64,000 bases of DNA, from NCBI GenBank assembly GCA_029953675.1, contig JAMWBK010000001.1:1116001-1180000 (forward strand). The letters run 5' to 3'. The notes beneath the pieces are model-generated. The model ran no database searches. It was given only the letters and a program-made list of their open reading frames with translations, and was not told where the DNA came from. The translations under genes were made by a program, and so were the position numbers. Numbering within the stretch: position 1 is the stretch's first letter; the number at the start of each line of letters is the position of its first letter. Source of the DNA: Rhodosorus marinus CCMP1338. Its lineage: Eukaryota; Plantae; Rhodophyta. Shown here in pieces: positions 8,873-49,340 of this stretch.

Positions 8873-8903
8873 AGGCTGCGACCTCGTAGCCGTGCCTGGA
8901 GCG

Positions 8904-11255: not shown

Positions 11256-11261
11256 GTCCTA

Positions 11262-29754: not shown

Positions 29755-30051
29755 ACTCGCTTTATTAGCATAGCCTGAAGCGCTACGCCTGGCGTGAAGA
29801 GGAACTAAGAACTAGGTAGGGAAGCGTGCAAACCCAGGCGCCTATGGCGCGCTTCAGCAAGCATGCTACTCGAATATCGCCACAGAGAGACACTTAAACG
29901 CCGCAAAAAGTTCCAAGTATTCAACAGGATGCTCAGTAAAACATTTCCGCAACCACTCCAAACCCGACTTCTCCACATGACCAAAGCTTTCCACAATGAA
30001 GGGCCGGAACCGGTGGGAACGACCCTCAGCGCGGAAGACTGGCCATACTCT
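29755..30051 (-). mobile_element. 3' end of a CRE-A2 copy split by A1 copy 3
   Basis: Begins at TSD AGAGTATGG; HVEKSGLEW variant; AATAAAG tail. Confidence 0.88.
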
Positions 30052-33000
30052 GGACTTTACTTGCATAGCCTGAAGCGCTACGCAAGGCGTGAAGATGAAC
30101 TAATAACTAGGGAGGGAAGCATGCAACCCCAGGCGCCGATGGCGCGCCTCGGAAAGCATGTCGCTGGAATATCGCCAAAGGAAGACACTTAAACGCCTCA
30201 AGAGCGCCAAATATTCAGTAGGATGCTCAGCAAAACAATTCCGCAACCACTCTAAACCCGACTTATCCACGTGACCAAAGCTTTCCACAATGAATGGCTG
30301 GAACCGGTGAGAGCGACCCTCAGCGCAAGGCAGACTGGCCATGCTCTCAGCATACCGTCGTTCCTTAACTCTTCGAAGGGCTGAAGCCGCGGCCCCCCGG
30401 CGGCGGGCGGCTGCGGTGAGGTGGGCGCTGGCCACGGGGCAGGTAATCGCAAGGTCCACATATGTTGAGCGTCTGGCAGCAGCGTCGGAGACGAGGAGAT
30501 CGGCTATACAACGGGGCGGTGCAGAGTCCTAGATTGATCTGGGCAGTTCCGACTCAAACTCAACCGTCTGCCCTATCCGAGTCAAAAAATTCGCTGAGGA
30601 TGTACTTGAGGCGAGTGTGACGCCTCGTACGGAGACCTCTCAACAGTCCGCAGGAACCCAGGAAGTGGTAGCCACAAGCGTCAATCCGGCTCTCACATCC
30701 CTGACAGAAAGACGGCCGATTGGAGTGCCACGGAGCCTGTGGCAAACCGAGATAGATCCGTGCGGCAGAACGGAACTGGAAAGCATCGAGACGATGACTC
30801 AATGACGACGGTAGAGTGGTTAACCACAAGTGCGAGAGGTGGCCTCTCATGCCGCGGAGACGAGCGGCAGTGGTAGGCGGCGTGAGAGGAGAATTGAGCA
30901 TGACTGTGTGAGCGGCACTGTGTTGGCCCCAGGTGAGGCTATGTTGAATCACATCAGCGCGGGAGCTCCACAATCGGCTCAAACCCGGATAATCTGCAAC
31001 AGGGGACCCGGGGCTAGCCTCTCCGTCATCAGCAAGAACTCGGTCGAGGGGAGAATCCTCAATCGCTTCAGCTCGTCCCCATAACAGCTCCTCCCAGGAA
31101 CGAAAGCGGGACCGATTTGCGTCCGGCACGGCGTTGCACATCCTGAACGCGTGTTGAAGACCATCATAAATTGTCAAAGGCGGGGGCGGCAGGGTCACTG
31201 GATCCTCGTTGTTCAAAGCTCGAACCAAGAGGCAGGCAGTTAGCATCTGGAAGGTCACCAACGTTCGCAGCGCGGTAGCCCAGAAGGCAACCGCCGCTGG
31301 CGAGCATACCAGCCCACGGTCTGCGACGCCGAATCCCCCTAATCCCAACGGTAGAGCGATCTGTGCACGAATCAAGTCCCTGTCGGGAGCAGCTTCAAGA
31401 TCGAGGGGCTCGTCCAAGAGCGTTCCCCAGTGTTGCAGGGTCATCTCGTCGGCTTTAGCCGCGATCCACGAGCCCCAAGCTGGAGGCAGGCTGCGCAACC
31501 AGTAGTTGAGTCTGGGACCGGCACAAAAGCGGGAAAGCAAGCAGGCCGATTGCAGCATGCTGTCGGGTAGGTGCTCAATGGCGTCGGTGAGTTGCTTGTG
31601 CCGTGCCAAAACTCGCTCGCAGGATGCTTGGACAAAGTTGTCAGTCCCCAATCCGACGCCGTGGTGTTCGAACCCTTCACGTTCGCTGATTAGTCGCAGA
31701 GTGGGTGGCAGAGAGGCCAGCGACACGTTCCTCGGGGGGAGAAAGCGACATTTTTCTGTTTCCACAGTCAAACCGACGCGACGTGCAATCGCTTCAATCT
31801 CGGTCAGCCCCCTAGCCAGGGTGTCAGGGGTGCCCAGCAATGTTACGTCATCGTGGTACGCGCAGATTCGAAGATCCGAGACCTCAGTCGGAAGACGTAA
31901 AAGTACGAGCTGAAGGGCACAGGCATGAAGAAGAGGTCTGCAAGGGTCGCCTTGTTGGACGCCAGTATGTGCTTGAAAAACAGTGCCCTCCGTTGTCAAG
32001 TAGGGGAGGCTCTCCCCTCCGTAAATACCCGATAGAAACGGCCACGCCTCCGGAAACACCCGTCGGAGCACCTCTAGCGCATGCGTCCGCGACACGCTGT
32101 TGAATGCGTTCCGGAAATCAACCACCAAGACTCCCCACTCCGGCCTACTGGCGCGTTCTAGCTCGATCCCATGGGTGATTAGTTCGCAATCCCCAGAAAA
32201 TCCCACCCCTACTTGTAAGGGCGCCATAAAAGCTGTGACTCGCTGGCGAAGGCGCTGGCATAGCCACCCCCGGGCTAACTTCCGTAGGCTCTCCACCATC
32301 CCGATCGGTCGGAGACGCGGGTGGGCCGGCTGGTGGCCAGGTTTCGTGAGCAAGCAAAGCTGTGCCTGCCGGAGATGTTCCCATGGCGCAGACGCACCCG
32401 ATACGCCCTGGAACAACTTGTTAAGGATCCTCAGAAGCGCGCTCTGGCCAGGCTGGCTCAGGGCCTGCAATAGCTCTGTTCTTAGTCCGGAGGGTCCGGG
32501 ACAGCGTCCCCGACGCGAGGTACGAAGCAAATCCTCCAGGTCAGACTCACTGAGCGTCAGATCGATGCGAAACCTGGCCAACTCCGGACGGTCCAAGAAT
32601 ACCTCGAATTCAGGGGAAAAGTCCACGTCGGACTCAGGGAACAAAGACCACACCGTCTGGGCGAGACTATCATCGTAGGGGAGCACAGGCGCCTGGCCCT
32701 CCAAAACCCGCGCCGCTCGACTTAAATCGCCCACTGCTACCAATTTCTGTACTCGAGCCGGCACGGGCGACACTGTGCCATGCCGAGTCCGACGGGCGGA
32801 TGGTGATGACGACGCCAAATAGCTGCGCTGTAGTACTTCGAAGTCTCCCTTCAAGAACAGGGCCAGTCGGTCTCGTACTCGCCATCTGCGCTCCGATGTG
32901 TGAATGGGGGCCAGAATCAGGCGCGGCATGACCCCCAGAAAAACCCAAATGACTGTGTCCCGAATGTTACGAGCCAGGCTCGTGAAGATGAAATCGAGAA

Positions 33001-34776
33001 TGGTTCCAGCTACTAGAAGGTCTCCACGAGGGAGGACGACTGGGGGAATGCCCCCACGGAGGGGAAGCGAGCCTCCTTCCAAAGAAATCCACCGCCGGAG
33101 CCAACTCCGAAAACGCGTACGCCAAATGCCCCAGTCTCCGCTCTCCTTCAGGACATAAGACTGTAGATCCATAGGCTGCGACCTCGTAGCCGTGCCTGGA
33201 GCGCTAATCGTGCTTCTCCCCCTTAGACCCGGGGGAGTCGGTCCTCGCTCTCTTACCTCCTATCCGCACCAAAGTCGTGAGCCGCCCACTCCGCGAGGCT
33301 CGCGGAACGGATCCCGCGGGCTTCAGCAAAGTAACCTGGGCGTCCTCCACCGCCATGCCCTCAGTCTGCTCCCCTGCCTCACCACTCTCGCTGGAAGTGG
33401 TGCTAGAAGCAGAGCCCTCCAAAATCCCCAACCGCTGCAGCTCTGTCTTTTAGCGCGAAGTCAGCACAAGTCGCCTCTCCAGATCGAAGAAGCTGGACAC
33501 CGCCATGCACAGGTGACGAGGGCCCGACCGGAACCGCTCCAACAAGATCCTCTCAAGGCGCTGAATCCGTAGCCAATGGATCGCTGCCGCCTTCACGCTG
33601 CTCTCATGCTCAGAGAGCCCTGCCGTTTCTCCCGGAGACAGGAAATTGCCCGGGAAACAGTCAAAATCGAAGTGCAAAACCACCTGCGGATTGCAGCGCA
33701 ACCACCGGGCGCTCCCAGGCCACTGCTCGGTAGGCTTCGCCAGCAAGGCCTCCAGGTACTTGGCGGCGGTTGCGGAGACCAAAAACAGCACATCGCGGCC
33801 CTCATAGTTTTCGAAGAAGAAATCACCCCGGCTGCACCCTAACGATTCCGCAAAAGTGTCCCGGAAGTCTCGCATAGACGGAACCTGGCCTCGTCTAGTC
33901 TGGGGCCGGACATTTCGCACCCACAGAAATTGGTGAGTGGTCTCCACAGGTCCATCCTGAGGCTCGCGAGATGGTAGGAAACGGAGCATAGCCGCCGTAC
34001 GTGTGGCAGTGGTGCCCTTGCGCAAGACTGAGGCGTACGAAGCCCCCCCCTTGCGGCCACCACGTGTCCCCGAAGTAGCCGGGAGCTGGTGACCACCTGA
34101 GGGCTGGTCCAAGAGAGGGAAGTCCACAGCTGCAGTCTCCTCCACACCGGTTGCCGCACAGTCACCACCACCATTGCCTCGAGTCCCCGAGCGCTGAGGC
34201 GCGTTTTGGCCCGGCCTGCCGCTCCCCAACGTCGTACTGTCCCGCGCAGAAGCAACCGCCCTCGCCTGTCCCGGGACAGGTTCATGTTGATTGACCTGAT
34301 GATGACTGCCTTCATCCAACGCTGCCACTCTGGTGCAATTCAAATTCTCCTCCGAATTTGAATTTGACCTGGCCAGCAATCCCGATTCCAGCCCACCTAG
34401 CTTCTGGGTGAGCTGAGGGAGCACTCCACGATCACTCGCAGCCGTGATCAGGCTGGTGACAGCGGAGATAAGTGCACGCGCCTGGGTGCCAGAAGCGCCT
34501 TCCAAGTCAACCTTGGAAGAAAAGGTGCCGCAGCTGAGGCGAACACGGAGTCCCCCACCCGGCAGTGCCTCCTTGGGAGGACGCTCCGTCGAGCGCGGAG
34601 ATATCCCTACCATCCCGGAAGACAGAAGTAGTTGCAAATGCAAACGACGCACCGCGGAAAATCGACGGGGAGGCGTACCAGATCAAGCGCTTCCCGTAAA
34701 CGAACACGCTCGCGACCGAAAAAGAAACAAAACCCCAATCCTCAGCCACTGGCTTACTGGCATTCATCAGGATGCT
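30052..34776 (-). mobile_element. CRE-A1 copy 3, apparently full length; ORF1 33204-34613 (one nonsense at 33450), ORF2 30100-33172 (one frameshift near 30580)
   Basis: 870-aa uninterrupted RT ORF; 9-bp TSD ccatactct at 30043-30051 and 34777-34785. Confidence 0.95.
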
Positions 34777-36465
34777 CCATACTCTCAGCATACGTTCGTT
34801 CCTTCACGCGGCGAAGGGCCGAAGCAGCACCTCCCCGGCGGCGGGCGGCAGCCGTGAGATGGGCGCTTACCACAGGGCATGTAATCGCGAAGTCAACATA
34901 TGCTGAGCGTGCGCCGGCAGCATCAGAGACGAGGATATCTGCGATACAACGGGGCGGTGCCGTGTCCGAGACCGATCTGGGTAGTTCCGATTCCACCTCA
35001 ACCGTATGCCCTACCCGAGTCAAACATTCGCTGAGAATGTGCTTGAAGCGAGTGTGACGCCTCGTACGAAGACCTCTCAACAGTCCGCGTGAACCTAAAA
35101 AGTGGTAACCACAAGCATCGATCCGACTCTCACATCCCTGACAGAAAGACGGCCGATTAGAGTGCCACGGAGCTTGTGGCAAACCCAGATAGATCCGTGC
35201 AGCAGAGCGGAACTGAAAGGCGTCAAGACGGTGACCCAGTGGTGAAGGCAGCGTGGTTAAACCACAAGTGCGACAGGTTGCCTCCCATGCCGCGGAGGCG
35301 AGCGGCGGTGGTAGGCGGTGTGAGGGGAGAGTTGAGGAATATTGCCTGAGCAGCAATGTGTTGGCCCCAGGTGGGGCTATGTTGAATCACATCAGTGCGC
35401 GAGCTCCATAATCGGCTCAGACAAGGGTAATCTGGAACAGGTGACCCGGGGCTGGCTTCCCCGTCGTCTGCGAGGACCCTGTCGATGGGAGAGTCCTCGA
35501 TCGCCGCAGTACGTCCGCATAACAGCTCTCTCCAGGAGCGGAACTTGGATCGATTCTCGTCCGGCACGGCGTTGCACTTACTGAACGCCTGTTGCAGCGC
35601 ATCATATATACTCAAAAGCGGTGGCGGAAGGGTCGCGGGGTCTTCGCTAGTCAGCCCTAGCCAAAAGGCAGGCATTTAGCATCCGAAAACTCGCCAAGGT
35701 GCGAAGCGCGGTAGCCCAGGAGGCGACCGCCGCAGGCGAGCATACGAGTCCACGGTCGGCCACTCCAAATCAACCTAATCGCAACGGTAGGGAAATCTGG
35801 GCACGAATTAGGTCCCAGTCAGGAGTCGCTTCAACATCCAAGGGTTCATCCAAGAGCGTTCCCCAGTGCTTCAGCATCGCCTCGTCCGCCTTGGCTGCCA
35901 TCCACGAGCCCCAATGGGGTGGAAGGCTTCGCAGCCAGTAATTCAGCCGGGGGCAGGCATAAAAGCAGGAAAGCAGGCTTGCAGATTGTAGCATGCTGTC
36001 CGGTAACCGCTCATTGGCGTCAGTGAGCTGCTTCTGGCGTACTAAAACTCGTTCACAGGAGTCTTGCACGAAGTTGTCACTCCCCAAACCGACGCCATGG
36101 TGCTCGAGCCCCTCACGTTCACCAGAGACTCGGAGACTAGATGGCAGGGAGTCCGTCGAAACTTCACGCGGGGCGAGAAAACGGCATTTCTCGGGTTCCA
36201 CGGTCAGACCTACTCCACGTGCTATTGCTTCGATCTGGGTCAATCCCCGAGCCAAGGTCGCAGGGGTGCCCAGCAACGTCACGTCGCCGTTGAGGCACAG
36301 ATTCGCAGATCCGGCACCGCAGCCGCCATTCGCAAAAGCAGGCCCACAAGGATCACCTTGTTGAACGACAGTACGTGCTGCAAAAATAGGGCCCTGTGTT
36401 GTCAAGTAAGGGAGGCTCCCCTCCCTTACTTGATACCGGATAGGAACGGCCACGCCTCCGGGAGC
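34777..36465 (-). mobile_element. 5' portion of the split CRE-A2 copy (RT C-terminal part to RLE), degenerate
   Basis: Homologous to ORF2 with many indels; ends RTYAESM at the TSD. Confidence 0.88.
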
Positions 36466-39125
36466 TAGTCCACGTCGGACGACGGGAACAAAGCCGACAC
36501 AGTTTTGGTCCAGACTCTCATCGTACGGGGGAACAGGCGTTTACTCCAAGACCCTTGCCGCTCGACTCAGGTCGCCAACCACCGCCAATTTCGGCACTCG
36601 AGTCGTCACGGGCGAGACTGGTCCAGTCCGAGCCCGACGCACAGAGTGCTCCCTCCGATGACGCCAAGTAGCTTTGCTGTAGTACCTGACCCTCTGGGCT
36701 ACGAACGGAATTACTGAAGGCCTTGAGCAAGCCTGGCCAGAGCGCCATGGTGAAGATCCTGAATACGCTGTTCCAGGGTGCAGGGAGTGCGCCTGCCCCT
36801 TGGGACCATCTGCGACGGGCACAGCTTTGCTTGTTAACGAAACCCGACCACGAGCCGGCACACCCGCATCTCCGGCCGATCGGCATGGTTGAGAGTCTAC
36901 GGAAACTCGCCGGGAGGTGGCTATGCCAGCGCCTGCGCCAGCGAGTCACCGCCTTTATGGCGCCTTGGCAGGTAGGGGTGGGAATTTCCGGGGGTTGCGA
37001 ACTAGTCACCCATACGATCGAGCACGAGCTAGCGAGTAGGCGTGATTGGGGAGTTTTGGTAGTTGACTTTCGTAACGCATTCAACAGCGTCTCGCGGACG
37101 CATGCTTTGGAGGTGATTCGCAAGGTATTCCCTGAGGCGTGGCCGTTCCTATCCGGTATTTACGCAGGGGGGAGCCTCCCTTACTTGACAACGCAGGGCT
37201 CTGTTTTTGCAGTACGTACTGGCGTTCAACAGGGTGATCCTTGTGGGTCGGTACTCCACGCATGTGCCTTGCAGCTCGTGCTCCAGCGACTGGCGGCTGA
37301 GGTGCCGGAGCTTCGCATCTGTGCCTACCATGACGACGTGAGGTTGCTGGGCACTCCTGAGCACTTGGCTCGGGGACTGACCCAGATCGAAGCAATCGCA
37401 CGTGGAGTAGGTCTAACCTTGGAACCCGAAAAATGCTGCTTTCTCGGCCCGCGTGAAGTTTCGAGGGGCTCCCTGCCACCTAGTCTCCGGGCCGTTGGTG
37501 AACATGCGGGGCTCGAGCACTATGGCGTCGGTTTGGGGAGTGACAACTTTGTCCAAGACTCTTGCGAACGAGTTTTAGCGCGCCATAAGCAGCTAACCGA
37601 CGCCATTGAGCGCATACCATGCTCCAATCGGCTTGCCTGCTCTCCCGCTTTTGTGCGGCCCCGAACTGAATTACTGGCTGCGAAGCCTTCCACCGCACTG
37701 GGGCTCGTGGATGGCAGCCAAGGCGGGCGAGGCGACGCTGAAGCACTGGGGAACGCTCTTGGATGAATCCCTGGATGTGGAAGCGGCTCCTGACAGGGAC
37801 CTAATTCGTGGCCAGATTGCCCTACCTTTACGATAAGGCGGATTTGGTGTGGCCGACCGTGGACTCGAAGGCTCGGCAGCGGCGGTCGCCTCATGGGCTA
37901 CCGCGCTTCGCACCTTGGTGAGTTTTTGGATGCGAAGTGCTTGCCTTTTGTCTAGAGCACTGACTATTGAAGACCACGTGACCCTTCCGCCGCCGCTTTT
38001 GAGTATCGATGATGCTCTAGATCAGGCGTTCAGTAAGTGCAACGCCGTGCCGGACGAGAGCCGACCCAGATTTCGCTCCTGGAAGGAGCTGTTATGGAGA
38101 CGAACTGAGGCGCTCGAGGACTCTCCCATCGACAGAGTACTCGCCGACGAGGAGGAAGCTAGACCCGGGTCGCCGGTTGCCGATTACCCGGGTCTGAGCC
38201 GATTCTGGAGCTCGCGCACTGATGTGATACAACATAGCCTCACCTGGGGCCAACACAGTGCCGCTCACGCAATCTTGCTCAGCTCTCCACTCACACCGCC
38301 TACCACCGCCGCTCGCCTCCGCGGCATGGGAGGCCATCTTTCACATTTGTGGTTAACGACCCTGCCGTCATCACTGGGTCACCGTCTCGATGCCTTCCAG
38401 ATTCGCTCTGCCGCACGGATTTACCTGGGTTTGCCACAAGCTCCGTGGCACTCTAATCGGCCGTCTTTCTGTCAGGGATGTGAGAGTCGAATCGATGCTT
38501 GTGGTTAACATTTCTTAGGTTCATGCGGACTGTTGAGAGGTCTTCGTACGAATCGTCACACTCGCTTCAAGTACATTCTCAGCGAATACCTGACTCGGGT
38601 AGGGCATACGGTTGAGGTGGAATCGGAACTACTCAGATCGGTCTCTCGGATAGGGCACCGCCCCGCTGTATCGCAGATCTTCTCGTCTCCGATGCTGCCC
38701 CCAGACGCTCAGAATATGTTGACCTCGCGATTACATGCCCTGTGGCAAGCGCCCATCTGACGGCTTCGGCCCTTCGCCGCGTGAAGGAACGACGGTATGC
38801 TGAGAGTATGGCCGGCCTGCCTCGCGCTCAGGGTCGCTCCCACCGGTTCCAGCCTTTCATTGCGGAAAGCTTTGGTCACATGGAGAAGTCGGGTTTGGAG
38901 TGGTTGCGGAAATGTTTCACTGAGCATCCTGTTGAATACTTGGAACTTTTGCGGCGTTTAAGTATCTCTCTGCGGCGATATTCGAGCAGCATGCTTGCCG
39001 AGGCGCGCCATCGGCGTCTGCGTTTGCACGCTTCCCTATCTAGTTCTTAGTTTCTTTTAACGGTTTGCGTAGCGCTGTAGGCTATGCTAATAAAGCCAAT
39101 AAAGCCATCCAATAAAGCCAGCCAA
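36466..39125 (+). mobile_element. CRE-A2 copy with an inverted 5' segment (36466-~36690)
   Basis: Minus-strand VLQQSYLAS..FPSSDVD joined to plus-strand PSGLRTELL..end; AATAAAGCC tail. Confidence 0.88.
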
Positions 39126-39169
39126 ACCCAGGAGGAATGTAAAATGTACTCCATGTCTACCGCGTAGGC

Positions 39170-39345
39170 AGAAACGTGTGAAATGAATGAATTTGTTTAA
39201 AGAAAAACAATCGCAGGGAAAAAAAACCTACGCGTGGCTAATATCGCGCACCTCCAAGATCAAAAAGCACTCATACGCCACAGCAAGAAACTTAAACGGG
39301 TAAACGAGCAGAGCTGGTCAGGGCGGTTGCGGAACAACGCCCTAG
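39170..39345 (-). mobile_element. Old B 3' stub
   Basis: gcacctccaagatcaaa..cgccacagcaagaaacttaaacgggtaaac..cagggcg. Confidence 0.65.
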
Positions 39346-40063
39346 TTCTGCTTTGAGAGGAATTGACTTTGCAACGTGATATGCGAATACATTCGGGTTC
39401 GCCTCACGTCCAGTAGCTGTGCTGGGGCAGTTCCGGATTTCTGGAATCGAGACTTTCCGATAAAGAGTCCTTCATGCTCTTACACACCTCCAGGGCTTCA
39501 GAGCAGTTTTCGCTTACTATTCGGGCTGGTTCTGCCCGGCTTTGCTCGCAACTCCGGAATGGAGGGATGCAGTAGCCGCGCACCTTCCCTGTTTGGTGTC
39601 AACAGGATGTTCGATTGGGAGCTGACAAGGTTCTTACCAGAAGTCACCCCCCCCCCCCGTGGTACTGTGCCACCAAAAGGGAATAATTCACTGCTAGTCC
39701 AGTCCTATCCATCTCCACTGACCCGAACGGACCTGTCACACGATGCTGCGCCAGCTGGCTAAGCGAACTCAACAGCGGAAGATTGGATGCCAGTCCATAT
39801 CCTTGGGCGATCACAATAACTCGATTTCTTGTCTCCTTTTATATTGTTCCCGATCATACGTACATACCCTCCTATGTGTGTAGATGTATTAAGTCCCTCC
39901 CCGTATCCGCCGCCCCATGTCCACCGCTACTACAAGTCGCGTGGGAACTGCCCAAATCAACCAAATTTCGCAGTTGAGCCGCAAGCGGGATTGATACTAT
40001 TACGTGTTTCTTCTTGTGTTCATAGCATCGATATATGCAAACGTGCTCCCGGTTGTCCCAAGT

Positions 40064-41538
40064 TTAGTCTCCTTTCAGTTTCCTCTTCATTCCAGGCATC
40101 CATCCGAAGAACTTATCCACAACCTCGCCGGCCCTGGTGCTAAGTTCTGTAGACAAGCTGCTGCTCAGACAGGCCGTGAAGATGAGGAACCCTCCAAGTA
40201 CTCCTTGAGAAGTCAGCGTCTCGTCCAGGAAGAAGGCTGAGAAGGCCGCTGCGAAAAAAGGTTCGCTACTAACGAGCAATGAGAGCTCAGCCGCAGACAA
40301 CCTCTTGAGGCTCAAGTTCTCCAAAACCAGAGTGAGTCCGGTTGTTATCAGACCAGTGTACAGCAGCGATCCGAAGACCAGACTATCCGAGACGGCAACC
40401 TGAATGCCGGAAAAATCCAGAGTTCCATATAGCATCAGAGAATCTATAGCGTACCAGACTGCAGAGAGGCCTCCAACAGTAGCCAACTGAGCAGCACTCA
40501 ACGCCATTGCCGAATCCGGATACCTAAGAGTTGGTTTCGGTAAAAACAGCCTGTTAGAAGGAAAGATGAGGTGTAATTCGATGCTTTGCAAGCTTTCCAA
40601 AATTTCCTGTTCTTACTTCGATAAAGCCCGCTCGTTGCAGATAAACTTGTATGCAAAGGCAATTGTTGATAGAAAGCCCAGAATGTCGCCTACGGAAGGA
40701 GTAGCAGCCGAGCTCAACTCAAGCAGCGCGACTCCAGAGATGGCTAACAGTATCGATATCATCGGTACCGGATTCTTCTCAACACCATGTTCTCTAATAT
40801 AGTTCGAACAACAGGAAGGGTGCAGGTGAGTCACTACCAATGACACCTCCTGCGAGAGTGTCTGATCGGGAGGGGGCAGTTGGAGCTAGGAGATAGGGCT
40901 CTATTTTTCGAAACTTACTTCGATGGAAACATGGTACCCAACAGGGGTACAAAAACCACAGTGAGGGAACAGAGGAAGGCGATTTTGTTCGCGGTAGAAT
41001 ACTTGAGTGCCATTGTCTGAAGATAGTAGCCCATAAATACGTATTTTCCGATATCGAAGCCGCGGAATAAGACTTCCCTCGATGCGCCGATCATCCATGG
41101 GCTCAGCGCTAACGCGGCGAGCCCGAATCTTGCGAATGCCGATGCCGCTACCCGCACTGACTCATCGAGCATCTTTACAACAGCAAAGTTGGTTCCCCAT
41201 AGTGCAGCTACGAGGATCATAGTAGCACGAGGCCACATATAATTGAAAACGGCCTCTGCATCCAGTTTTTCATCTTCAACAGCCTGCTCGGACGCAAGAA
41301 CAACCTCACCCTCCGGTCCAGCATCGGCCTCCCCAACCACCTTACGTTTCCCACTACCACTCCTAACATCCTCCAATTCGAAATCTCGAGTAGATACAGC
41401 CAACCGAACCTTCAAACCCCTAGAAGACAAACCTACAAGCCCCCTGGCCCGCAAAACAGGCCCACCGGACGCAAATCCAGCCGACAAAAACCCCACACCA
41501 TCCATAACACCCCCATACTCTCCAACAAACAAACTCAT
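40064..41538 (-). CDS. EamA/DMT family transporter with a probable plastid transit peptide; exons 41538-40919, 40793-40617, 40523-40064 (418 aa)
   Basis: LVAALWGTNF, AFARFGLA, LQTMALKYSTANKIAFL, VGDILG, LLVSSEPFFAA..LDE..GGFLI; GTAAG donors, phase-2 introns, CTAAC branch site. Confidence 0.9.
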
Positions 41539-41699
41539 CCTATCTCAACCTCCCAGTCTCCAGGAAGACCCTCTACCTTACCCCTTCTCCTCCACTAAAT
41601 TTCGCAATATCTCCTCAGCCTAGACTGCTCTGCCCGTACCCCTACACTCCGACATCTTCGTCCGACAAATACCGAACATCTCCCACGCAACCTACCTCC

Positions 41700-42160
41700 T
41701 TCCCCCTCCCCCTCCAACCCCACCACCACACCCTCCAGCCTTCCTCTATAGACCCTCAAACAAGCAAACTTCTCATAGAACCCTTCCGCCTAACCCTCAT
41801 TCCCCTCCCACCCCACCACCACACCCTCCAACCTTCCTCTATAAACACTCCAAGAATGCGAACTTCTCAGCAACCTCTTCCACCTAAAACCTCATTAAGA
41901 ACTGACAGCCAGCAGCTACCACATGCGCACCATTGATTCTCATACCTTAAACCTCATTGAGAGCTGGCAGCCAGCAGCCTCCCCATGCCCCACCATTGAT
42001 TCTCATCGCGTTGACGAAGATAAAGTGTGGCAATATCGCCTGCCAATGATTTTTGGACAGGTTTTTTGGACAGTCTATATTGGTGTGATCATTTCAAGCG
42101 GGTATCCAGCAGCAAACCCATGCCCTCCGCCATTGATTCTCATCGCATTGATGATGAAGT
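41700..42160 (+). repeat. Degenerate direct repeats upstream of the EamA gene (~92-bp C-rich unit x2; cagcagc..catg..ccattgattctcat x3)
   Basis: Visible repeated units. Confidence 0.6.
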
Positions 42161-43149
42161 GTGATGTTGACACCTCCCAATGATGGCAATATTCCATTCA
42201 TTCATCATGAGATTGCAGCAGACCAAACAAAGAAAAAGTCCGTTGACTTAACGGAAAACAGACGTTTTTGAGGTTTCTTGGATTTGTATTGGTAGATGAT
42301 ACTTAATGTTCAATCTATGTTAATGCGTACTGATCGTTGATTTGATCTGTATCGATTGATAATAGTTTCTAAATGTTTTATTGGATCTTGCGATTTTTTG
42401 AGGTTTTAGCGCTAATTTTAGGGAAGACTGGAATGGGACTTTCTGAGCTCTGATTTTGATGCGGTCTTATTTTGGAAAGAATGATTTTGTAATGGTGTAC
42501 AAAATATGAGGATTTGCGGAGGAACGTCTGTACTTGGTTGGACGATTGATAAAAGCTTTTCAGAAATATGAAAATAATTTGGTTATCGCGTTGCGCAGAT
42601 TTAGAGTTTGTTACGTACTTGTGGATTGACATAGAACATATTCTGGCTATATTACAGGCTAAAAATTGTAAGTTTTCGACTTGTACTTAAGAAAAAGATT
42701 CGCAACTTCTTCGGGCGGGAAAGTGCGGAAATTGGAAAATAGAAATTCGGTTTTAGAGATCAGCCAAACAGAAGCCTTTTTTTTTGTCGTGAGATCTTCT
42801 CCAAGATTCACATGCGCCTCAGGTTTCGGTATATTCTTTTTTGAATAAATCTGTGGATTTATCCAAACGGGCCAAAGACGGTATTTTAAGTAAAAAATGA
42901 AGAAAACAGTGGATCCTTGACGAATATGTCAATTTCAAAGGGTTAATGGTTTTCTCCTTTGTGCTAAATTTTTGTTACACCAATACGCGTCAAACGCGTC
43001 TAGAGCGAAATGGGGAGGAGGGCGGGTCCCTCAATCTGGACTCGGAACCCGTAGCATATGAGCTCGTCCTGGAGGGCTTAACGAAGTCAGAGCTGTGGGA
43101 GGTGTTTTCCTATATCAAAGTGACATCAAGATCCAGAGCACGTCTACCG

Positions 43150-44220
43150 TAAAATAGGTATTTGAGGCTAAGACGAAGAACAGGTAGGTGAAGTGAAGTA
43201 ATCAAGCCGTAAGAAAACTTCCTCCAGCAGGACTTCGAATCGCTCCTGATCTCGTCTTCTATACTGTCTATACGCTGAATGGACTATCCCAGCTACGTTA
43301 TTTGATCTGAACCTTACAACTATCGCTAAGGGCGCAAAGTCCATACCAGCCAACACTCTCCTTCGCCTTTATGCCCTCTGGGAAGGTCGCTCTGCGCTAC
43401 CGAAAACGCACATCAATTTCTCTGTACGCTCCTTGGTGAGTGCCTTTGTGAGATTATCAGCGATCATCTCATCCGTACCAAGATATCTAAGTTGCACCTC
43501 ACCCGAAATGGATCTCTAGCGTGCGTACTGTAACTTCACAGATACGTACGTGACGTACAACTGTCTCCAGTAGGCGCCCAATGCGGACATGAATTGTTGT
43601 TAGTGAACGCGACCGTCAGGCACGTCGATTGCGCTGCCAATTGCTTTAAGGAACTCTTGAACCTATCGTTGGGTTGTCAACATATCCCCGAGCGCTTGAC
43701 ACTTGGCCTCCGCGGTTGACCCCGCAACCGATCTTTGCTGCCTCTATCATCGACAGGTTGCTGGTGATCTACCGTTCATCACCAAAAAGCGATCCTGAGC
43801 TACTTTACCTCAGCACTCGCCAACTTGCATCCGATAATCCAGTCATTTGATAACTGATTTTCCCGAGTAGAGGAGAGAACCAGTTAGCTCCTGAATTGGT
43901 GAACAAGTTACTTCCATTGATTTTGACAACGTTGTGTTTGATTCTATGGCGATGGGTGTGGAACGGGGACGGTATCCCCTCGATCCGTAGGTTGCGATCA
44001 ACTTCTCGATGTAGTCTTCCTGTGTCAGGTGTATCTCACGCGTTGTTTTTTTTGGCTGTTTTTCTAGATCTTGACCCCGAGCAAGTCCCTTGCTTGTTGT
44101 TTGATCTCGTAGAGTCTGGACAATGTGATTCGTATTTTTCTAAGAACAGCATAATTCTTGGGGCTCATGTCAATGGCTGGTCCTAGGGAGGGAGTAGTGA
44201 GGACAAGGGCAGAAATCAAG
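43150..44220 (-). mobile_element. Second copia remnant: RT end, RNase H, PPT and start of the 3' LTR
   Basis: LSRLYEIK..LLGVKI..HLTQEDYIEKL; GLSDASW; VAGSTAEA; MIADNLTKAL; PPT GGCGAAGGAGAG followed by TGTTG at 43355. Confidence 0.8.
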
Positions 44221-44246
44221 GAGAAATATGAGGTTTCCAGGCTGCT

Positions 44247-44953
44247 TCGTGCGTTGTTCAGAAGAGCCCCTGCGCAGGACCTGTGAATAGGTCGCACGTG
44301 GGGCACTGGAGGGAGCAGGATTCGGCCCCGACGCGGGCCCAGGAGGCGTCTGTCCTTCAATAGGGGTAGGCCAGTCGGAATCAGGAATGACCGGAGCGGA
44401 GCGCTCGGGTCGGGTGGAGGCAGGCCCCGCTGTACCGTGTGGATCCGCGGGGACGGGCACCGGGGGGGGGTATGGGGCAGGCGCGGAGGCGGAGAAGCGC
44501 TCCAAATAGGCGATCAACAGGGGCAGGCGGTGTTCCTGGGAAGCAGTCACAAGAAGACTCGTCAGTTTCGAGCAGATCACATGGGCCAACTCGTCAGCGC
44601 AGTCCGTGAGGGTGGCCGCGGTACTAAACCCGCCCACGCTGAGCTCCACGCGCGCTGAGAGAACGGCTCCGTCCGCCGGAATGGGTGGGGAAACCCCAAC
44701 CATAACGATTGGAAGGTGTGAAAAACCGATTCCCTCACGAAACCCCCAAAAAGAGAACTTGTTCCCAACGTTTGCAACCAAAGAAAAACCACCACGACCT
44801 CCAAGGGGCGCTAGCAACCCCCAGCACGCACCACACCACTAGAAGATGCGGGGGAAAGGCTGCAGAAAGAAGCGCCTCCCACCGAAGAACACAATTGCGA
44901 CTCAAAACCACCAAAAGCCAGCACCATACACCCTCACGAAACCAAAAACAAAG
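44247..44953 (-). repeat. Inverted copy of the first ~700 bp of CRE-B (left arm of a palindrome)
   Basis: Reverse complement of 45028-45725 with a few indels and substitutions. Confidence 0.92.
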
Positions 44954-47517
44954 TTGGTACGATGCCTTTCCCGGCTTTGCGCTTCAGTTGGTACGATGCC
45001 TTTCCCGGCTTTGCGCTTCATTAAAATCTTTGTTTTTGGTTTCGTGAGGGTGTATGGTGCTGGCTTTTGGTGGTTTTGAGTCGCAATTGTGTTCTTCGGT
45101 AGGAGGCGCTTCTTTCTGCAGCCTTTCCCCCGCATCTTCTAGTGGTGTGGTGCGTGCTGGGGGTTGCTAGCGCCCCTTGGAGGTCGTGGTGGTTTTTCTT
45201 TGGTTGCAAACGTTGGGAACAAGTTCTCTTTTTGGGGGTTTCGTGAGGGAATCGGTTTTTCACACCTTCCAATCGTTATGGTTGGGGTTTCCCCACCCAT
45301 TCCGGCGGACGGAGCCGTTCTCTCAGCGCGCGTGGAGCTCAGCGTGGGCGAGTTAGTACCGCGGCCACCCTCACGGACTGCGCTGACGAGTTGGCCCGTG
45401 TGATCTGCTCGAAACTAACGAGTCTTCTTGTGACTGCTTCCCAGGAACACCGCCTGCCCCTGCTGATCGCCTATTTGGAGCGCTTCTCCGCCTCCGCGCC
45501 TGCCCCATACCCCCGGTGCCCGTCCCCGCGGATCCACACGGTACAGCGGGGCCTGCCTCCACCCGACCCGAGCGCTCCGCTCCGGTCATGATTCAGACTG
45601 GCCTACCCCTATTGAAGGACAGACGCCTCCTGGGCCCGCGTCGGGCCTGAATCCTGCTCCCTCCAGTGCCCCACGTGCGACCAATTCGCAGGTCCTGCGC
45701 AGGGGCTCTTCTGAACAACGCACGACGGCAATGGTGCGTATGATGCCACAACACATCCCTATTGACTCTTCTCGCCAACTATCTCCGTTCCACTTTGTTT
45801 GGATGACGAACGTGCGTCCCCAGACCCCCTCTCGTGGTCGGGGCCGCGCGCCCGTCCACTACCGCGATTTTCGCGACACCATGGCTTCCTCCCTTGGGGT
45901 CGCCCCGTCTGAATTCCTATATGTGGACTTCACGGGCCCTCATGCCTGTTTTCTTGTTACTGACTCGGCTTACCAGTTCCTTCAATCGCTTGTAACAACC
46001 CCCGCGCCCCAGCGCTCTGCTCTGGCCAACATGATACTGACTCGTCCTCATGTCTCTTTGTTTGTCGAGTTCGATCGTTTTGACGCCGGCTGGGTTCCTC
46101 CGTCGGCCTTGCAAAACCTGGATGCCTCGCAGGCTTCGGTTGTCGCGCTACACACTCATGCGGCGCGGCTTCGCGCATACAGGCGAGCCTCTTCGCGCGT
46201 TCTCCTCCTCGCGGGGTCCTCCGCACCGCGCTAGAGGCCTTCCTCTCCACTGAGGCCACCCTGCTGGAAGCCCACCCTGCGTATGACCTTCTGCCACCGA
46301 CTCTTGAGCACCCTTTCTCCCCTCGCCCTGTCTCCGAGGCTCGTGACACCGACATGGCAGAAGCACCATCGGCCTCTCCCAATCCGCTGGCTCTGGACAC
46401 CCTCAGTCAAGACTCCGCTGCTGAAAACCCTGTGTCTACTTTCTTAGGTCTTTTAGTTCCTTCGTGCGCCCCCCCACGTAAGCGTCGTGCGGCTCCTGAG
46501 CCTCCCTCCGAGGCACCTCCTCCGGATATTCGATCTGCCTTCCCGACTGAGGGGAGGCCCGATGTCTGAGTCTTCCTCCTCCGCGTGCGTGTCGCCCCGG
46601 TTACCCCTGTTTACCAGTGACCGCTCAGCCTGGCATGAGCGTGTTCTCTCGTGGTTTTCGCACCTTGTCGCCTCCTACCCGGACGGTTCCCTTCCCCTTT
46701 GTCGTCAGAGCACGGCCGTGCGGCTCCCTCGTCGACTTCATAAGCCCCTAGGATTGGTGTTGGATTTTCTCTGGCAGCAGGTCGCCGCGAACCCTCACTG
46801 CTCTCTTCGCTGGGAACTCTTGTTCTTTTTTCCCCGCCTCGTGCTCACCTCCTCTACCGTCCCCCTCAACCCACATCCTCGCCGGGTCCACCCTCGCCGA
46901 AAACTGCAAATGTTCCTTTCCGGCGACTTTGAGGACCTCGAGCGTCTTTATTTCGCTTCTCTCTCTTCCTTTTCTCCTAGTGCTCCCTCAGCTTTTAGGT
47001 CTTCTCGACAGAATCGGGCGCGTCACGCGGTGGCAGGCGGTGATCTGCGGCGGGCAGCCGGGATCCTCCAGCAGCGGCAACCTGTGGTTCCATACTCCGA
47101 TGATCTTTCTTCACCGCTCCGTTTGCTCTTTCCCTCGGAAGGCTCCCCTTGGGACTCCTCGTTTGAATCAGTGTTGGAAGAGTACCGCGCCGCGCCACAT
47201 CCCAGTGCGCGGTTAGTGGTCAATCTGGAGGCGGTGCGTGAGTTGGTTCATGATGCTCCGAAGGGCCGTTCCCCAGGGCCCTCGGGGCTGCGGGTGGAAT
47301 ATCTCCGTTTCTTAAGTGATGAAGGTTTGAAGGCGTTGGCGTGGGTGGTCGAAGGGCTTGTGAATGGTGATCCCCTGTGTGAGTGTGCGTGGTTCTTGGT
47401 CGGGCGTTCGCAGTTGTGTCTGCTTTCGAAGCCCGGTCACACGGCCTCGAGCCCTGCTATTCGCCCTATTGGCCTGGTTGAGGTGGTCCGCAAATTCGCG
47501 GCGCGATGGTTAGTGAA

Positions 47518-47763
47518 AATCCTGGTTCCCGAATCCCGCCGTTTCTTTGGGCACGTGCAGTTGGGCGTGGGCTATCGTGGTGGCTGTGAGTTGTTGTCTG
47601 TTTTACTCCGTTCGGAAATGGCGTACTCCCCAGATTCTGGAATCCTGGTTCCCGAATCCCGCCGTTTCTTTGGGCACGTGCAGTTGGGCGTGGGCTATCG
47701 TGGTGGCTGTGAGTTGTTGTCTGTTTTACTCCGTTCGGAAATGGCGTACTCCCCAGATTCTGG
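47518..47763 (+). repeat. Exact in-frame 123-bp tandem duplication in the B RT domain
   Basis: ILVPESRRFFGHVQLGVGYRGGCELLSVLLRSEMAYSPDSG x2. Confidence 0.9.
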
Positions 47764-48134
47764 GCTCCTCTCTGTAGATTTTACCAATGCGTTCAACCGC
47801 GTCTCTCGTCCGGCTCTCATGCACGTGGTGCGCGAAGTCTTCCCTGTAGGCTTTCCCTTTGTTAGTAGACTTTATTCTCCCCGTCGTGGGGCTACCTATG
47901 ACACCCTTGGCGCTTCCTCACACACGTTTGCGGCGCGCACAGGGGTACAACAGGGTGATCCCTTGTCCCCTTTCCTGCATGCCTGTGGACTACAACTCGT
48001 CTTGCTTTGTCTTCGCTCCGAATTCCCGCAGGTTCGTACGGTTGCATACCACGACGACGTGTGCCTCCTGGGGCCCCCCGATACTCTAGCGCTCGCTTAT
48101 GATCGTCTCCCCTCCTTGGCTTCGCGGGTTGACT

Positions 48135-49340
48135 GGACTTTACTAGCATAGCCTGAAGCGCTACGCAAGGCGTGAAGATGAACTAATAACGAGGGAGGGA
48201 AGCATGCAACCCCAGGCGCCGATGGCGCGCCTCGGAAAGCATGTCGCTGGAATATCGCCAAAGGGAGACACTTAAACGCCTCAAGAGCGCCAAATATTCA
48301 GTAGGATGCTCAGCAAAACATTTCCGCAACCACTCTAAACCCGACTTATCCACGTGACCAAAGCTTTCCACAATGAATGGCTGGAACCGGTGAGAGCGAC
48401 CCTCAGCGCAAGGCAGACTGGCCATGCTCTCAGCATACCGTCGTTCCTTAACTCTTCGAGGGGCTGAAGCCGCGGCCCCCCGGCGGCGGGCGGCTGCGGT
48501 GAGGTGGGCGCTGGCCACGGGGCAGGTAATCGCAAGGTCCACATATGTTGAGCGTCTGGCAGCAGCGTCGGAGACGAGGAGATCGGCTATACAACGGGGC
48601 GGTGCAGAGTCCGAGATGGATCTGGGCAGTTCCGACTCAACCTCAACCGTATGCCCTATCCGAGTCAAAAATTCGCTGAGGATGTACTTGAGGCGAGTGT
48701 GACGCCTCGTACGGAGACCTCGCAACAGTCCGCAGGAACCCAGGAAGTGGTAGCCACAAGCGTCAATCCGGCTCTCACATCCCTGACAGAAACACGGCCG
48801 ATTAGAGTGCCACGGAGCCTGTGGCAAACCGAGATAGATCCGTGCGGCAGAACGGAACTGGAAAGCATCGAGACGATGACTCAATGACGACGGTAGAGTG
48901 GTTAACCACAAGTGCGAGAGGTGGCCTCCCATGCCGCGGAGACGAGCGGCAGTGGTAGGCGGCGTGAGAGGAGAATTGAGCATGACTGTGTGAGCGGCAC
49001 TGTGTTGGCCCCAGGTGAGGCTATGTTGAATCACATCAGCGCGGGAGCTCCACAATCGGCTCAAACCCGGGTAGTCTGCAACAGGGGACCCGGGGCTAGC
49101 CTCTCCGTCATCGGCAAGAACTCGGTCGAGGGGACAATCCTCAATCGCTTCAGCTCGTCCCCATAACAGCTCCCTCCAGGAACGAAAGCGGGACCGATTT
49201 GCGTCCGGCACGGCGTTGCACCTCCTGAACGCGTGTTGAAGACCATCATAAATTGTCAAAAGCGGGGTTACGTTAGAAACAAAACCCCAATCCTCGACAA
49301 CAACTACTTTACGGACTTTACTAGCATTTCCGACTCCAGA
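48135..49340 (-). mobile_element. CRE-A1 copy 4 (5'-truncated, RLE ORF 48183-49259) inserted in the B RT
   Basis: TSD ttgact at 48129-48134 and 49341-49346; removing the insert restores SRVDLQVNHHKS. Confidence 0.93.

What the first reader, a model, noticed from the sequence alone, without database searches (positions are those of the whole stretch)
34681..49340. Two independent A inserts share a composite 5' cap containing the same 21-nt sequence
Seen, element sense, inside the TSDs. Copy 3: TSD-AGCATCCTGATGAAT(RLE scrap)-GCCAGTAAGCCAGT(tail-like)-GGCT-GAGGATTGGGGTTTTGTTTCT-...-body (34681-34776). Copy 4: TSD-TCTGGAGTCGGAA(RLE scrap)-ATGCTAGTAAAGTCCGTAAAG(3' end plus tail)-TAGTTGTTGTC-GAGGATTGGGGTTTTGTTTCT-AACGTAA-body (49267-49340). 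Copy 4's body is truncated to ~1.1 kb. Copies 1 and 2 also have tail-like sequence just 5' of their bodies. Inference: RT finishes by ordered template jumps, either to the RNA's extreme 5' end or to a separate small helper RNA, then to a 3'-end fragment. This recalls R2 template jumping and HeT-A 5' tags.
Basis: partly seen in the sequence, partly recalled or inferred. Interest (0 to 1): 0.8.

Follow-up and report, generated by a model that had tools for sequence, protein, structure and literature searches.

The report
Shared 21-base leader on retrotransposon copies
Two separate copies of a newly seen jumping gene in the red alga Rhodosorus marinus begin with the same 21 bases, most likely the start of the element's own RNA, sitting behind scraps picked up when its copying enzyme hopped between RNAs; the behaviour is already known from the related R2 elements, so this is a tidy natural example, not a new mechanism.

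Summary
GAGGATTGGGGTTTTGTTTCT occurs exactly twice in the 64 kb (34723-34743 and 49275-49295, minus strand). No other site matches, even with 3 mismatches. Both sites lie at 5' junctions of independent inserts of element A, inside verified target-site duplications (copy 3: GAGTATGG; copy 4: TTGACT).

The window comes from Rhodosorus marinus. A is an undescribed two-ORF LINE with a reverse transcriptase and a C-terminal restriction-like endonuclease (RLE).

All four A 5' junctions in the window carry pieces of element 3' ends. These are canonical 3' end plus 10-nt-repeat tail, or an alternative 3' end (..CCTGTTGAA) that once carries an A17 run. That fits serial jumps of the reverse transcriptase onto RNA 3' ends, as documented for R2 proteins.

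The 21-mer is most simply the first 21 nt of A's full-length transcript. In copy 3 it runs on through 43 nt into the body. In the 1.1-kb copy 4 it is joined through a 7-nt filler, by an internal gap or a jump.

A separate short helper RNA is not excluded. Spliced-leader addition is disfavoured. An "ordered" programme of jumps is not needed. With two instances and no access to the rest of the genome, confidence is moderate and interest is modest.

The parts
34723..34743 (-). 21-mer leader, copy 3 (GAGGATTGGGGTTTTGTTTCT)
   Evidence: Exact match. In element sense it is followed by the 43-nt stretch and then the A body.
49275..49295 (-). 21-mer leader, copy 4
   Evidence: Exact match. It is joined to the truncated body through AACGTAA.
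34680..34722 (-). 43-nt stretch between the 21-mer and GGTACGCC. Probably the next part of A's 5' UTR; absent from copy 1.
   Evidence: No other match in the window. There is no ATG from the 21-mer to the ORF1 ATG, 127 nt.
34744..34776 (-). Copy 3 outer cap: AGCATCCTGATGAAT (alternative 3' end of a B-type RNA) + GCCAGTAAGCCAGT (tail-like) + GGCT (filler)
   Evidence: The scrap is 14/15 to the B-type sequence at 10728, 29919 and 38923.
30051..34679 (-). A copy 3 body with short tail. ORF1 is about 34617-33453; ORF2 (RT) is 33259-30563; the RLE part is 30528-30103 after a frameshift; the 5' UTR intron is already removed.
34777..34784 (-). Copy 3 TSD, 5' copy (GAGTATGG); the 3' copy is at 30043-30050
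   Evidence: Compared with contiguous B2.
49296..49340 (-). Copy 4 outer cap: TCTGGAGTCGGAA (origin uncertain, 11/11 to B3's RLE-coding region) + ATGCTAGTAAAGTCCGTAAAG (A 3' end plus tail) + TAGTTGTTGTC (filler)
   Evidence: ATGCTAGTAAAGTCC matches the A 3' end exactly in 4 copies.
49268..49274 (-). 7-nt filler AACGTAA between the 21-mer and the truncated body of copy 4
   Evidence: All four other A copies read ..CCCTGCC(G/A)C|CCCCGC.. here, with no AG acceptor and no microhomology.
48135..49267 (-). A copy 4 body (last 1133 nt of A, open C-terminal RT/RLE frame) with a one-unit tail
   Evidence: Identity is 99.3% to copy 1 and 98.2% to copy 3.
49341..49346 (-). Copy 4 TSD (TTGACT on + strand); the other copy is at 48129-48134. 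The target is the RT-coding region of related element C.
   Evidence: Joining the flanks restores C's frame.
5677..10505 (-). A copy 1. The body starts at GGTACGCC (10484), with no 21-mer. The cap GCTGTGCTAATAATGCCAGTG is at 10485-10505. It retains a 106-nt GT..AG intron (10314-10419). The 3' tail holds an extra 3'-end fragment.
10629..14216 (+). A copy 2 composite. Cap 10629-11268 = B-like 3' unit plus tail | B-like RLE fragment ending ..CCTGTTGAA | 51-nt repeat of that end | A17 (11239-11255) | GTCCTAGTAAAGT. The body runs from 11267-11269 (junction base T ambiguous). The 296-nt 3' unit is duplicated (13457-14050). The tail is interspersed with 3'-end fragments.

Best explanation
Element A is a two-ORF non-LTR retrotransposon of Rhodosorus marinus. 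It has a reverse transcriptase followed by a CCHC/PD-(D/E)XK-type restriction-like endonuclease, and it inserts by target-primed reverse transcription.

Its RT often does not stop when it reaches the end of a template, or when it falls off early. It continues on the 3' end of another element RNA, copies a short stretch and may repeat this before the cDNA is joined to the upstream target. This leaves caps made of 3'-end/tail pieces at the 5' junction, and similar mosaics in the 3' tail. This part is shown by sequence anatomy and matches R2 biochemistry.

The 21-mer is the first 21 nt of A's full-length transcript (inferred). In copy 3 the RT copied a spliced, full-length RNA to its 5' terminus, so the 21-mer runs on through 43 nt into the body. 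In copy 4 the same terminus is attached through a 7-nt filler to a body truncated at 1.1 kb. Two routes are possible (inferred, not distinguishable here):
- The RT left a broken or paused template and resumed on the 5'-terminal piece of an A RNA held in the same complex.
- The template was already an internally deleted A RNA.

In both copies the RT then ran off the same 5' end (GAGG...), added a few untemplated bases and jumped to 3'-end/tail RNA.
For: 1. The 21-mer is exact, occurs only twice and sits only at A 5' junctions.
2. Both copies share the same 5' edge. Upstream of it the sequences are unrelated fillers (GGCT against TAGTTGTTGTC) followed by 3'-end/tail pieces, as expected where a template ends.
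3. In copy 3 the 21-mer plus 43 nt plus body form a 127-nt ATG-free leader that ends at the ORF1 ATG. The 43-mer has no other source in the window.
4. Both inserts are bounded by verified TSDs, so the caps belong to the insertion sites.
5. Copies 3 and 4 belong to different A sublineages (98.2% to each other; copy 4 is 99.3% to copy 1). The leader is therefore stably linked to A.
6. The jump model has independent support: the A17 run after ..CCTGTTGAA in copy 2's cap, B-family pieces in an A cap, 3'-fragment mosaics in the tails of copies 1 and 2, and four tandem 3' fragments at 2470-3060.
7. Copy 2's truncated body starts at one of only two internal GAGGATT sites, the same 7 nt that open the 21-mer (post hoc p about 1e-3). 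This hints that the motif marks RNA 5' ends.
8. R2 proteins give the same junction classes in cells and in vitro: tandem 3'-end-to-5'-end joins, extra templates, snap-backs and internally gapped inserts (PMC11371274).
9. The best solved-structure match of the RT is R2. The RLE motifs are invariant across homologues.
Against: - Copy 1 is the only other copy with a complete 5' region. It begins 64 nt downstream at GGTACGCC, directly behind a tail-like cap. GGTACGCC could therefore be the true 5' end, and the 64 nt could be added material.
- Every jump whose source can be identified in this window lands on an RNA 3' end. Copy 4 needs a landing 21 nt from a 5' end, with no microhomology. That calls for a 21-nt RNA fragment or an earlier deletion.
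- There are only two instances.
- There is no transcript evidence for the start site.
- The 5' ends of A and of the related element C do not align significantly.
- One-event jumping cannot be separated by sequence alone from repeated insertion into pre-existing tails.
Confidence: 0.55

Rival explanations
1. The 21-mer is a separate short RNA: a discrete 21-nt (siRNA-sized) species, or a small family sharing a 21-nt 5' part. The RT copies it end to end as one step in its series of jumps. The 43-mer in copy 3 would then be a piece of yet another RNA.
For: - In this window all identifiable jump acceptors are used from their 3' end. By that rule copy 4's acceptor ended at or just after ..GTTTCT.
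- Both edges of the shared block coincide in the two copies.
- Copy 1 starts at GGTACGCC without it.
- R2 proteins do pick up non-coding RNAs as 'extra templates' (PMC11371274).
Against: - There is no independent copy of the 21-mer in 64 kb.
- There is no Rfam family match.
- The context does not fold into a precursor-like hairpin: z -1.7 and +1.5 for the two copy-3 stretches and -1.6 for the copy-4 stretch.
- It needs two unknown RNAs (21-mer and 43-mer) in copy 3 where one contiguous 5' UTR suffices.
- It needs the same rare RNA to be caught in 2 of 4 events.
Confidence: 0.2
2. The 3'-end/tail pieces upstream of the bodies are not made in the same event. They are older, extremely 5'-truncated inserts whose tails were later used as landing sites by the present copies (tail-targeted tandem insertion). 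The 21-mer would still be the 5' end of the later insert.
For: - Elements of this family re-use sites. The GAGAG(T/C)ATGG site is hit three times.
- Four 3' fragments of different subfamilies lie head to tail at 2470-3060.
- Tail repeats would hide the second TSD.
Against: - It would require a prior mini-insert at each of four unrelated target sites.
- Copy 3's scrap joins an alternative 3' end directly to tail repeats.
- Copy 2's cap strings four pieces, including an A17 run. This is easier to explain as continuous synthesis, which is the documented behaviour of R2 RT.
Confidence: 0.2
3. The 21-mer is a leader added by RNA processing: a trans-spliced leader, or the first exon of a host gene or upstream promoter spliced onto acceptors in A.
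For: - A RNA is handled by the spliceosome. Copy 1 keeps a 106-nt GT..AG intron that copy 3 lacks.
- The block is a discrete unit joined to two different downstream sequences.
Against: - There is no AG acceptor at the copy-4 junction in any of the four full-length-region copies. The 7-nt AACGTAA is not A sequence.
- The 21-mer ends in TTTCT and is not followed by GT anywhere.
- To my knowledge, trans-splicing is not known in red algae.
Confidence: 0.05
4. The 64 nt (21-mer plus 43-mer) are 5'-transduced flank of a master copy whose transcript starts upstream of the element proper. The true element 5' end is GGTACGCC.
For: Copy 1's body begins exactly at GGTACGCC behind a cap. The 43-mer and 21-mer are absent from all other A sequence in the window.
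Against: Copy 4 carries only the first 21 nt, so an internal gap or jump is still needed. The two carriers belong to different sublineages, so one master locus would have had to stay active across about 2% divergence.
Confidence: 0.1

Closest known systems
R2 retrotransposon RT: end-to-end template jumping and the 5' junction classes seen with R2 proteins in cells (PRINT study, PMC11371274; Bibillo & Eickbush in vitro work, from memory)
   Same: - RT plus C-terminal RLE architecture; R2 is the best solved-structure match.
- Jumps from finished cDNA onto the 3' ends of further RNAs.
- 'Tandem' joins of a template 3' end to the 5' end of a full or truncated copy.
- Extra templates, snap-back inverted duplications (compare C'/C at 44247-45725) and internally gapped inserts.
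- Short untemplated fillers.
   Different: - A is not rDNA-specific.
- A has two ORFs and no N-terminal zinc-finger/Myb domain.
- No 5' ribozyme was detected.
- A carries a 10-nt-repeat tail.
- A hits its own relatives' coding sequence.
- R2 'extra templates' are mostly whole U6 RNA, not a 21-nt block.
U6/L1 and other chimeric retrocopies formed by template switching or RNA ligation (from memory; cited within PMC11371274)
   Same: A foreign or terminal RNA segment sits 5' of a 5'-truncated LINE body inside one TSD.
   Different: In those cases the extra segment is a recognisable full-length snRNA. Here the source is unknown and is most likely the element's own 5' end.
HeT-A 5' 'tags' in Drosophila telomere arrays (from memory)
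   Same: Short pieces of element 3' end are found immediately upstream of the element's 5' end.
   Different: HeT-A tags arise because the promoter lies in the 3' end of the upstream neighbour in a head-to-tail array. Copies 3 and 4 are solitary inserts with TSDs inside other elements. The pieces include an alternative 3' end with poly(A) and B-family sequence.
Internally deleted non-autonomous LINE derivatives (RIME/ingi, NARTc/L1Tc, R2 SIDEs; from memory)
   Same: Copy 4 keeps only the extreme 5' end and the 3' 1.1 kb of A.
   Different: Only one copy is seen and only 21 nt of the 5' end are retained. Whether the same junction recurs elsewhere is unknown.

Membership tests
RLE-bearing (R2-superclade) non-LTR retrotransposons | Reverse transcriptase domain of the non-LTR type | tested here: met
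   Pfam RVT_1, E = 2.7e-13. Best solved-structure matches are R2 proteins, then L1 ORF2p.
RLE-bearing (R2-superclade) non-LTR retrotransposons | C-terminal CCHC motif followed by PD-(D/E)XK-type nuclease motifs; no N-terminal APE domain | tested here: met
   The motifs CQGC..H....C, RRHT, ADLLV, YVDLAI and KERRY are present. C155, C158, H168, H184, D238, K268 and E295 are invariant in an alignment with 6 homologues. Pfam finds only RVT_1, so no APE domain. This is motif-level evidence only: sequence search found no solved-structure match for the RLE part.
RLE-bearing (R2-superclade) non-LTR retrotransposons | TPRT hallmarks: TSDs, 5' truncation, defined 3' end with tail | tested here: met
   TSDs of 8 and 6 bp were verified against an uninterrupted relative and by frame restoration. 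Copies 2 and 4 are truncated. All copies share the 3' end ..GGCTATGCTAGTAAAG plus an (AGTAAAGYCC)n tail.
R2 clade in the strict sense | Site-specific insertion in 28S rDNA | tested here: not met
   The targets are the RT region of element C, the RLE region of element B, and intergenic DNA. No rRNA is present in the window.
R2 clade in the strict sense | Single ORF with N-terminal zinc-finger/Myb domain; 5' HDV-like ribozyme | tested here: not met
   There are two ORFs. No zinc-finger or Myb domain appears in Pfam or by eye in ORF1 or the ORF2 N-terminus. Rfam finds no ribozyme at the 5' end, even at E <= 10.
HeT-A-type 5' tags | Head-to-tail array in which the upstream element's 3' end supplies the promoter and tag | tested here: not met
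   Copies 3 and 4 are solitary and TSD-bounded inside other elements. Promoter activity could not be tested.
Spliced-leader trans-splicing | Leader joined at an AG acceptor of the pre-mRNA | tested here: not met
   Full-length copies read ..CCCTGCCGC|CCCCGC.. at the copy-4 junction, and a non-A 7-mer intervenes.
Spliced-leader trans-splicing | Independent SL RNA genes (leader followed by a GT donor) | not testable with these tools
   None is present in the window. The rest of the genome could not be searched.
Chimeric retrocopy with a non-coding RNA as extra template | The extra segment maps to a known RNA and is copied from its 3' end | tested here: inconclusive
   No Rfam match and no other locus in the window. 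The source RNA is unknown.
Internally deleted non-autonomous derivative | Several copies at different sites share the same deletion junction | not testable with these tools
   Only copy 4 is available. Other genome regions could not be fetched.

The most novel reading that the evidence does not exclude
The RT (or its RNP) deliberately re-caps cDNAs. After aborting on a long template it jumps onto a discrete 21-nt RNA that carries the element's 5' terminus. That RNA could be a Dicer-length terminal fragment or a short promoter-proximal transcript held by the integration complex. Even truncated copies would then regain the leader, a leader-body fusion reminiscent of discontinuous synthesis in nidoviruses. 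The recurrence of GAGGATT at another RNA or cDNA end (copy 2) would then mark a recognised terminus.
Probability: 0.12. Interest if true: 0.75.

Novelty: new member of a known kind. Interest (0 to 1): 0.38.

Why it matters
How LINE cDNAs are finished and joined at their 5' end is the least understood step of target-primed reverse transcription. This window gives natural, TSD-bounded fossils of the junction classes that R2 proteins produce in engineered systems: jumps onto further RNA 3' ends, snap-back, and a possibly gapped copy. They come from a distant RLE element in a red alga, which suggests these behaviours are ancient properties of this enzyme class. If the 21-mer proved to be a leader added back onto truncated copies, that would be a new way for a LINE to preserve its 5' end. 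If it is simply the transcript's first 21 nt, the value is descriptive: it fixes the true 5' end of a new family and shows one gapped copy.

Tried and rejected
- Spliced leader or upstream exon: rejected for copy 4. There is no AG acceptor, and a foreign 7-mer sits at the junction.
- miRNA-like precursor or structured 5' element: folds of the leader contexts are no better than shuffles. Rfam finds nothing at gathering score in the window and nothing credible at E <= 10 around 34400-34900.
- Homology between the A leader and the 5' end of related element C, which would have shown the 64 nt to be ancestral 5' UTR: alignments are not significant (p about 0.05-0.1 against random window segments).
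- The 34-nt x2 spacer of the C'/C palindrome as an A-like 5' fragment: no better than background.
- Origin of copy 4's 13-mer: the 12/13 match at 43035 has no informative context. The 11/11 match in B3's RLE region is kept as a weak lead.
- More copies from outside the window: the 21-mer is absent from metagenome and viral contig collections. A scan with the A/B 3'-end motif gave 4 hits, all unrelated bacterial-looking DNA with no BLAST similarity to A or B.
- Protein search: it found no A-like protein above 37% identity, so the genome's own TE ORFs are not indexed.
- Look-ups of window genes: they identified the source record but returned only sequence already in the window. Two look-ups failed. 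Copy 5's 5' end, about 2 kb beyond position 64000, could not be reached.

Full report
**Source and setting**

A look-up of two host proteins encoded in the window places it on Rhodosorus marinus CCMP1338 contig JAMWBK010000001.1, at about 1.116-1.180 Mb. The assembly is described in PMC10250338. R. marinus is a unicellular red alga.

The window is a transposon-rich stretch between ordinary genes. Those genes include an ABCG-type transporter at 3541-5529, a ZIP transporter at 15860-16861, an RTX-repeat protein at 21651-23108 and a copia-type RT at 25669-27084.

**The elements**

Self-comparison and tblastn with the ORFs of copy 3 define the following elements.

| Family | Copy | Coordinates and sense |
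|---|---|---|
| A | c1 | 5677-10505, minus |
| A | c2 | 10629-14216, plus |
| A | c3 | 30051-34776, minus |
| A | c4 | 48135-49340, minus |
| A | c5 | 61434 to beyond 64000, minus |
| B (about 80% identical to A) | B1 | 34777-36690 plus 29760-30050 |
| B | B2 | 36682-39125 |
| B | B3 | 57737-59528 |
| C (about 37% protein identity to A) | C | 45028-51090 |
| C | partial copy | 18993-19873 |

- A has an ORF1 of about 400 aa with no known domain.
- ORF2 carries RVT_1 and a C-terminal CCHC plus RH / D / D / K-KY nuclease module.
- The key residues of that module are invariant in an alignment with six distant homologues.
- The best solved-structure matches of the RT are R2 proteins.
- The closest proteins in the large database are only 33-37% identical. 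They are unnamed metagenome proteins and proteins from Pyropia and Closterium. The family therefore appears to be undescribed.
- All copies end in ..GCGCTTCAGGCTATGCTAGTAAAG followed by a degenerate 10-nt repeat, (AGTAAAGYCC)n.

**Check of the observation**

The 21-mer is exact at both stated places and occurs nowhere else, even with three mismatches. I verified that both composites lie inside target-site duplications.

- Copy 3 sits in B1. The uninterrupted B2 reads ..GCTGAGAGTATGGCCGG... B1 reads ..GCTGAGAGTATGG | cap-A-tail | GAGTATGGCCAG...
- Copy 4 sits in the RT-coding region of C. Removing 48129-49340 restores C's reading frame and its similarity to A across the junction (..ASRVDLQVNHHKSF.. 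against ..ARRVGLTVETEKCRF..). Keeping the 13-mer TCTGGAGTCGGAA breaks the frame.
- Copy 4's body is the last 1133 nt of A.
- Copies 1 and 2 do carry tail-like sequence 5' of their bodies.

**What the cap pieces are**

- The middle piece in copy 4, ATGCTAGTAAAGTCC.., is an exact copy of the A 3' end plus tail.
- The copy-3 "RLE scrap" AGCATCCTGATGAAT is 14/15 identical to the B-type sequence ..GAGCATCCTGTTGAAT, about 125 nt upstream of the canonical 3' end.

Copy 2's 5' side explains that scrap. Moving outward from the body it reads:

1. GTCCTAGTAAAGT (tail).
2. A17 preceded by ..GAGCATCCTGTTGAA (51 nt).
3. The same end-point again, heading a fragment of about 280 nt.
4. A B-like 3' unit ending in its own tail.

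Every identifiable piece has its 3' edge at an RNA 3' end. That end is either the canonical one or an alternative end at ..CCTGTTGAA, which is polyadenylated in one case. The 5' edges are arbitrary.

The same pattern appears inside the 3' tails of copies 1 and 2, where tail, 3' fragment and tail alternate. It also appears as four head-to-tail 3' fragments of different subfamilies at 2470-3060.

This is what an RT that jumps from the end of one template to the 3' end of the next would leave. R2 proteins do exactly this in vitro. In human cells they give "tandem", "extra template", "snap-back" and "internally gapped" 5' junctions (PMC11371274).

A snap-back-like fossil is present too. The first ~700 nt of C are duplicated in inverted orientation, with 96-100% identity and a 74-nt spacer (44247-44953 / 45028-45725).

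**What the 21-mer is**

Three facts matter.

1. The two copies share the same 5' edge. Upstream of it they have unrelated fillers (GGCT; TAGTTGTTGTC) and then 3'-end pieces. That is the signature of a template 5' end.
2. In copy 3 the 21-mer runs without any recognisable joint through 43 nt into GGTACGCC.., where copy 1 begins. The 127 nt from the 21-mer to the ORF1 start contain no ATG. The 43-mer has no other source in the window.
3. In copy 4 the 21-mer is followed by AACGTAA and then body sequence. All other copies read ..CCCTGCC(G/A)C|CCCCGC.. at that point, so there is no splice acceptor and no microhomology.

The simplest account is that the 21-mer is the first 21 nt of A's transcript. 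On this account copy 3 is a full-length copy, copy 1 lacks the first 64 nt, and copy 4 has an internal gap. The gap was made either during reverse transcription (a jump to the 5'-terminal part of an A RNA) or beforehand (an internally deleted template).

Two further observations fit this account.

- The carriers belong to different sublineages. Copy 4 is 99.3% identical to copy 1 but 98.2% to copy 3.
- Copy 2's truncated body starts at one of only two internal GAGGATT sites, the heptamer that opens the 21-mer. The post hoc chance of this is about 1e-3. It suggests the motif marks RNA 5' ends.

**Why confidence is only moderate**

- Copy 1 starts exactly at GGTACGCC behind a cap, so the 64 nt could be additions.
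- All identifiable jumps here land on 3' ends, which would make copy 4's acceptor a roughly 21-nt RNA.
- There are only two instances.
- A separate short RNA therefore remains possible (about 0.2).
- A leader added by splicing is unlikely. A RNA is spliced, however: copy 1 keeps a 106-nt GT..AG intron one base upstream of the ORF1 ATG, and copy 3 lacks it.
- Sequence alone cannot distinguish one-event serial jumping from repeated insertion into older tails. I prefer the former. All four A junctions, at unrelated targets, carry such pieces, and copy 2's string includes a poly(A) run and B-family RNA.

**Comparison and membership**

- A meets the tested features of RLE-type LINEs: RT, CCHC plus nuclease motifs, no APE domain, TSDs, truncations and a tail.
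- A fails those of R2 proper: it has no rDNA specificity, two ORFs, no N-terminal zinc finger or Myb domain, and no ribozyme detected.
- The HeT-A analogy fails on context, because copies 3 and 4 are solitary TSD-bounded inserts.
- The behaviour works like R2 template jumping.

**Verdict**

- The general inference, that the RT finishes by template jumps, is well supported and already known in kind.
- The specific ideas of an ordered programme and a helper RNA are not supported by the evidence available, though they are not excluded.
- The element family is new, but the mechanism is most likely not.
- A genome-wide census of the 21-mer and transcript 5'-end mapping would settle the question. 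I could not reach the rest of the genome with the tools.

Noticed in passing
10314-10419 (-) versus about 34614/34615: Copy 1 of A has a 106-nt GT..AG segment in its 5' UTR, ending one base before the ORF1 ATG. Copy 3 lacks exactly this segment. It looks like a spliceosomal intron, so both spliced and unspliced A RNAs were retrotransposed.
   Followed up: partly
34777-34784 / 30043-30050; 13457-14050; 59520-59530: The sequence GAGAG(T/C)ATGG lies inside the RLE-coding region (codons of KERRYAES|M) and is hit repeatedly. Copy 3 is inserted there in B1. Copy 2 has its last 296 nt duplicated in tandem starting there (99% identical). B3's homology stops there. The family seems to target its own nuclease-coding sequence.
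   Followed up: partly
44247-44953 and 45028-45725: The first ~700 nt of element C are present as an inverted duplicate, 96-100% identical. The 74-nt spacer contains a perfect 34-nt tandem repeat. This looks like cDNA snap-back synthesis at the 5' end.
   Followed up: partly
2470-3060 (+): Four 3'-terminal fragments (55-220 nt) of different A/B-like subfamilies lie head to tail, each ending in its own short tail, with no element body attached.
   Followed up: partly
11267-11275 (+); equivalent sites in copies 1, 3 and 5: Copy 2's 5' truncation point is at an internal GAGGATT, the same heptamer that begins the 21-mer. B2's truncated 5' end (36690) lies only about 36 nt downstream of the equivalent position. 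This may be an internal RNA start or an RT stop region.
   Followed up: partly
5677-14216 and 29760-39125: Elements occur as head-to-head pairs, each member with its own tail. Copies 1 and 2 are separated by 124 nt of unrelated DNA. B1 and B2 abut directly but are only 86% identical. This could reflect priming from both sides of a break.
   Followed up: no
11239-11255 (+) and 10728-10742, 29919-29933, 38923-38937: An A17 run follows ..GAGCATCCTGTTGAA, about 125 nt upstream of the normal 3' end and inside the end of ORF2. This suggests an alternative poly(A) site in A/B transcripts, even though the elements normally end in a 10-nt repeat tail.
   Followed up: partly
21651-23108 (+): An intronless ORF has six matched stretches of the RTX calcium-binding nonapeptide repeat family (Pfam HemolysinCabind, E = 2.5e-30). 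The assembly annotates it as a 444-aa gene. RTX repeats are typically bacterial, so this may be a horizontally acquired gene in this red alga.
   Followed up: no
47518-47763 (+): A perfect 123-bp tandem duplication lies within the RT-coding region of element C, about 370 bp from the copy 4 insertion site.
   Followed up: no
18993-19025 and 51084-51090: Element C and its partial copy end in a different tail, (ATTC)n. That tail is preceded by a T-rich/G-rich hairpin-like 3' end that recurs as short fragments at many places in the window (for example 925-991, 1161-1279, 23780-23898, 27257-27379).
   Followed up: no
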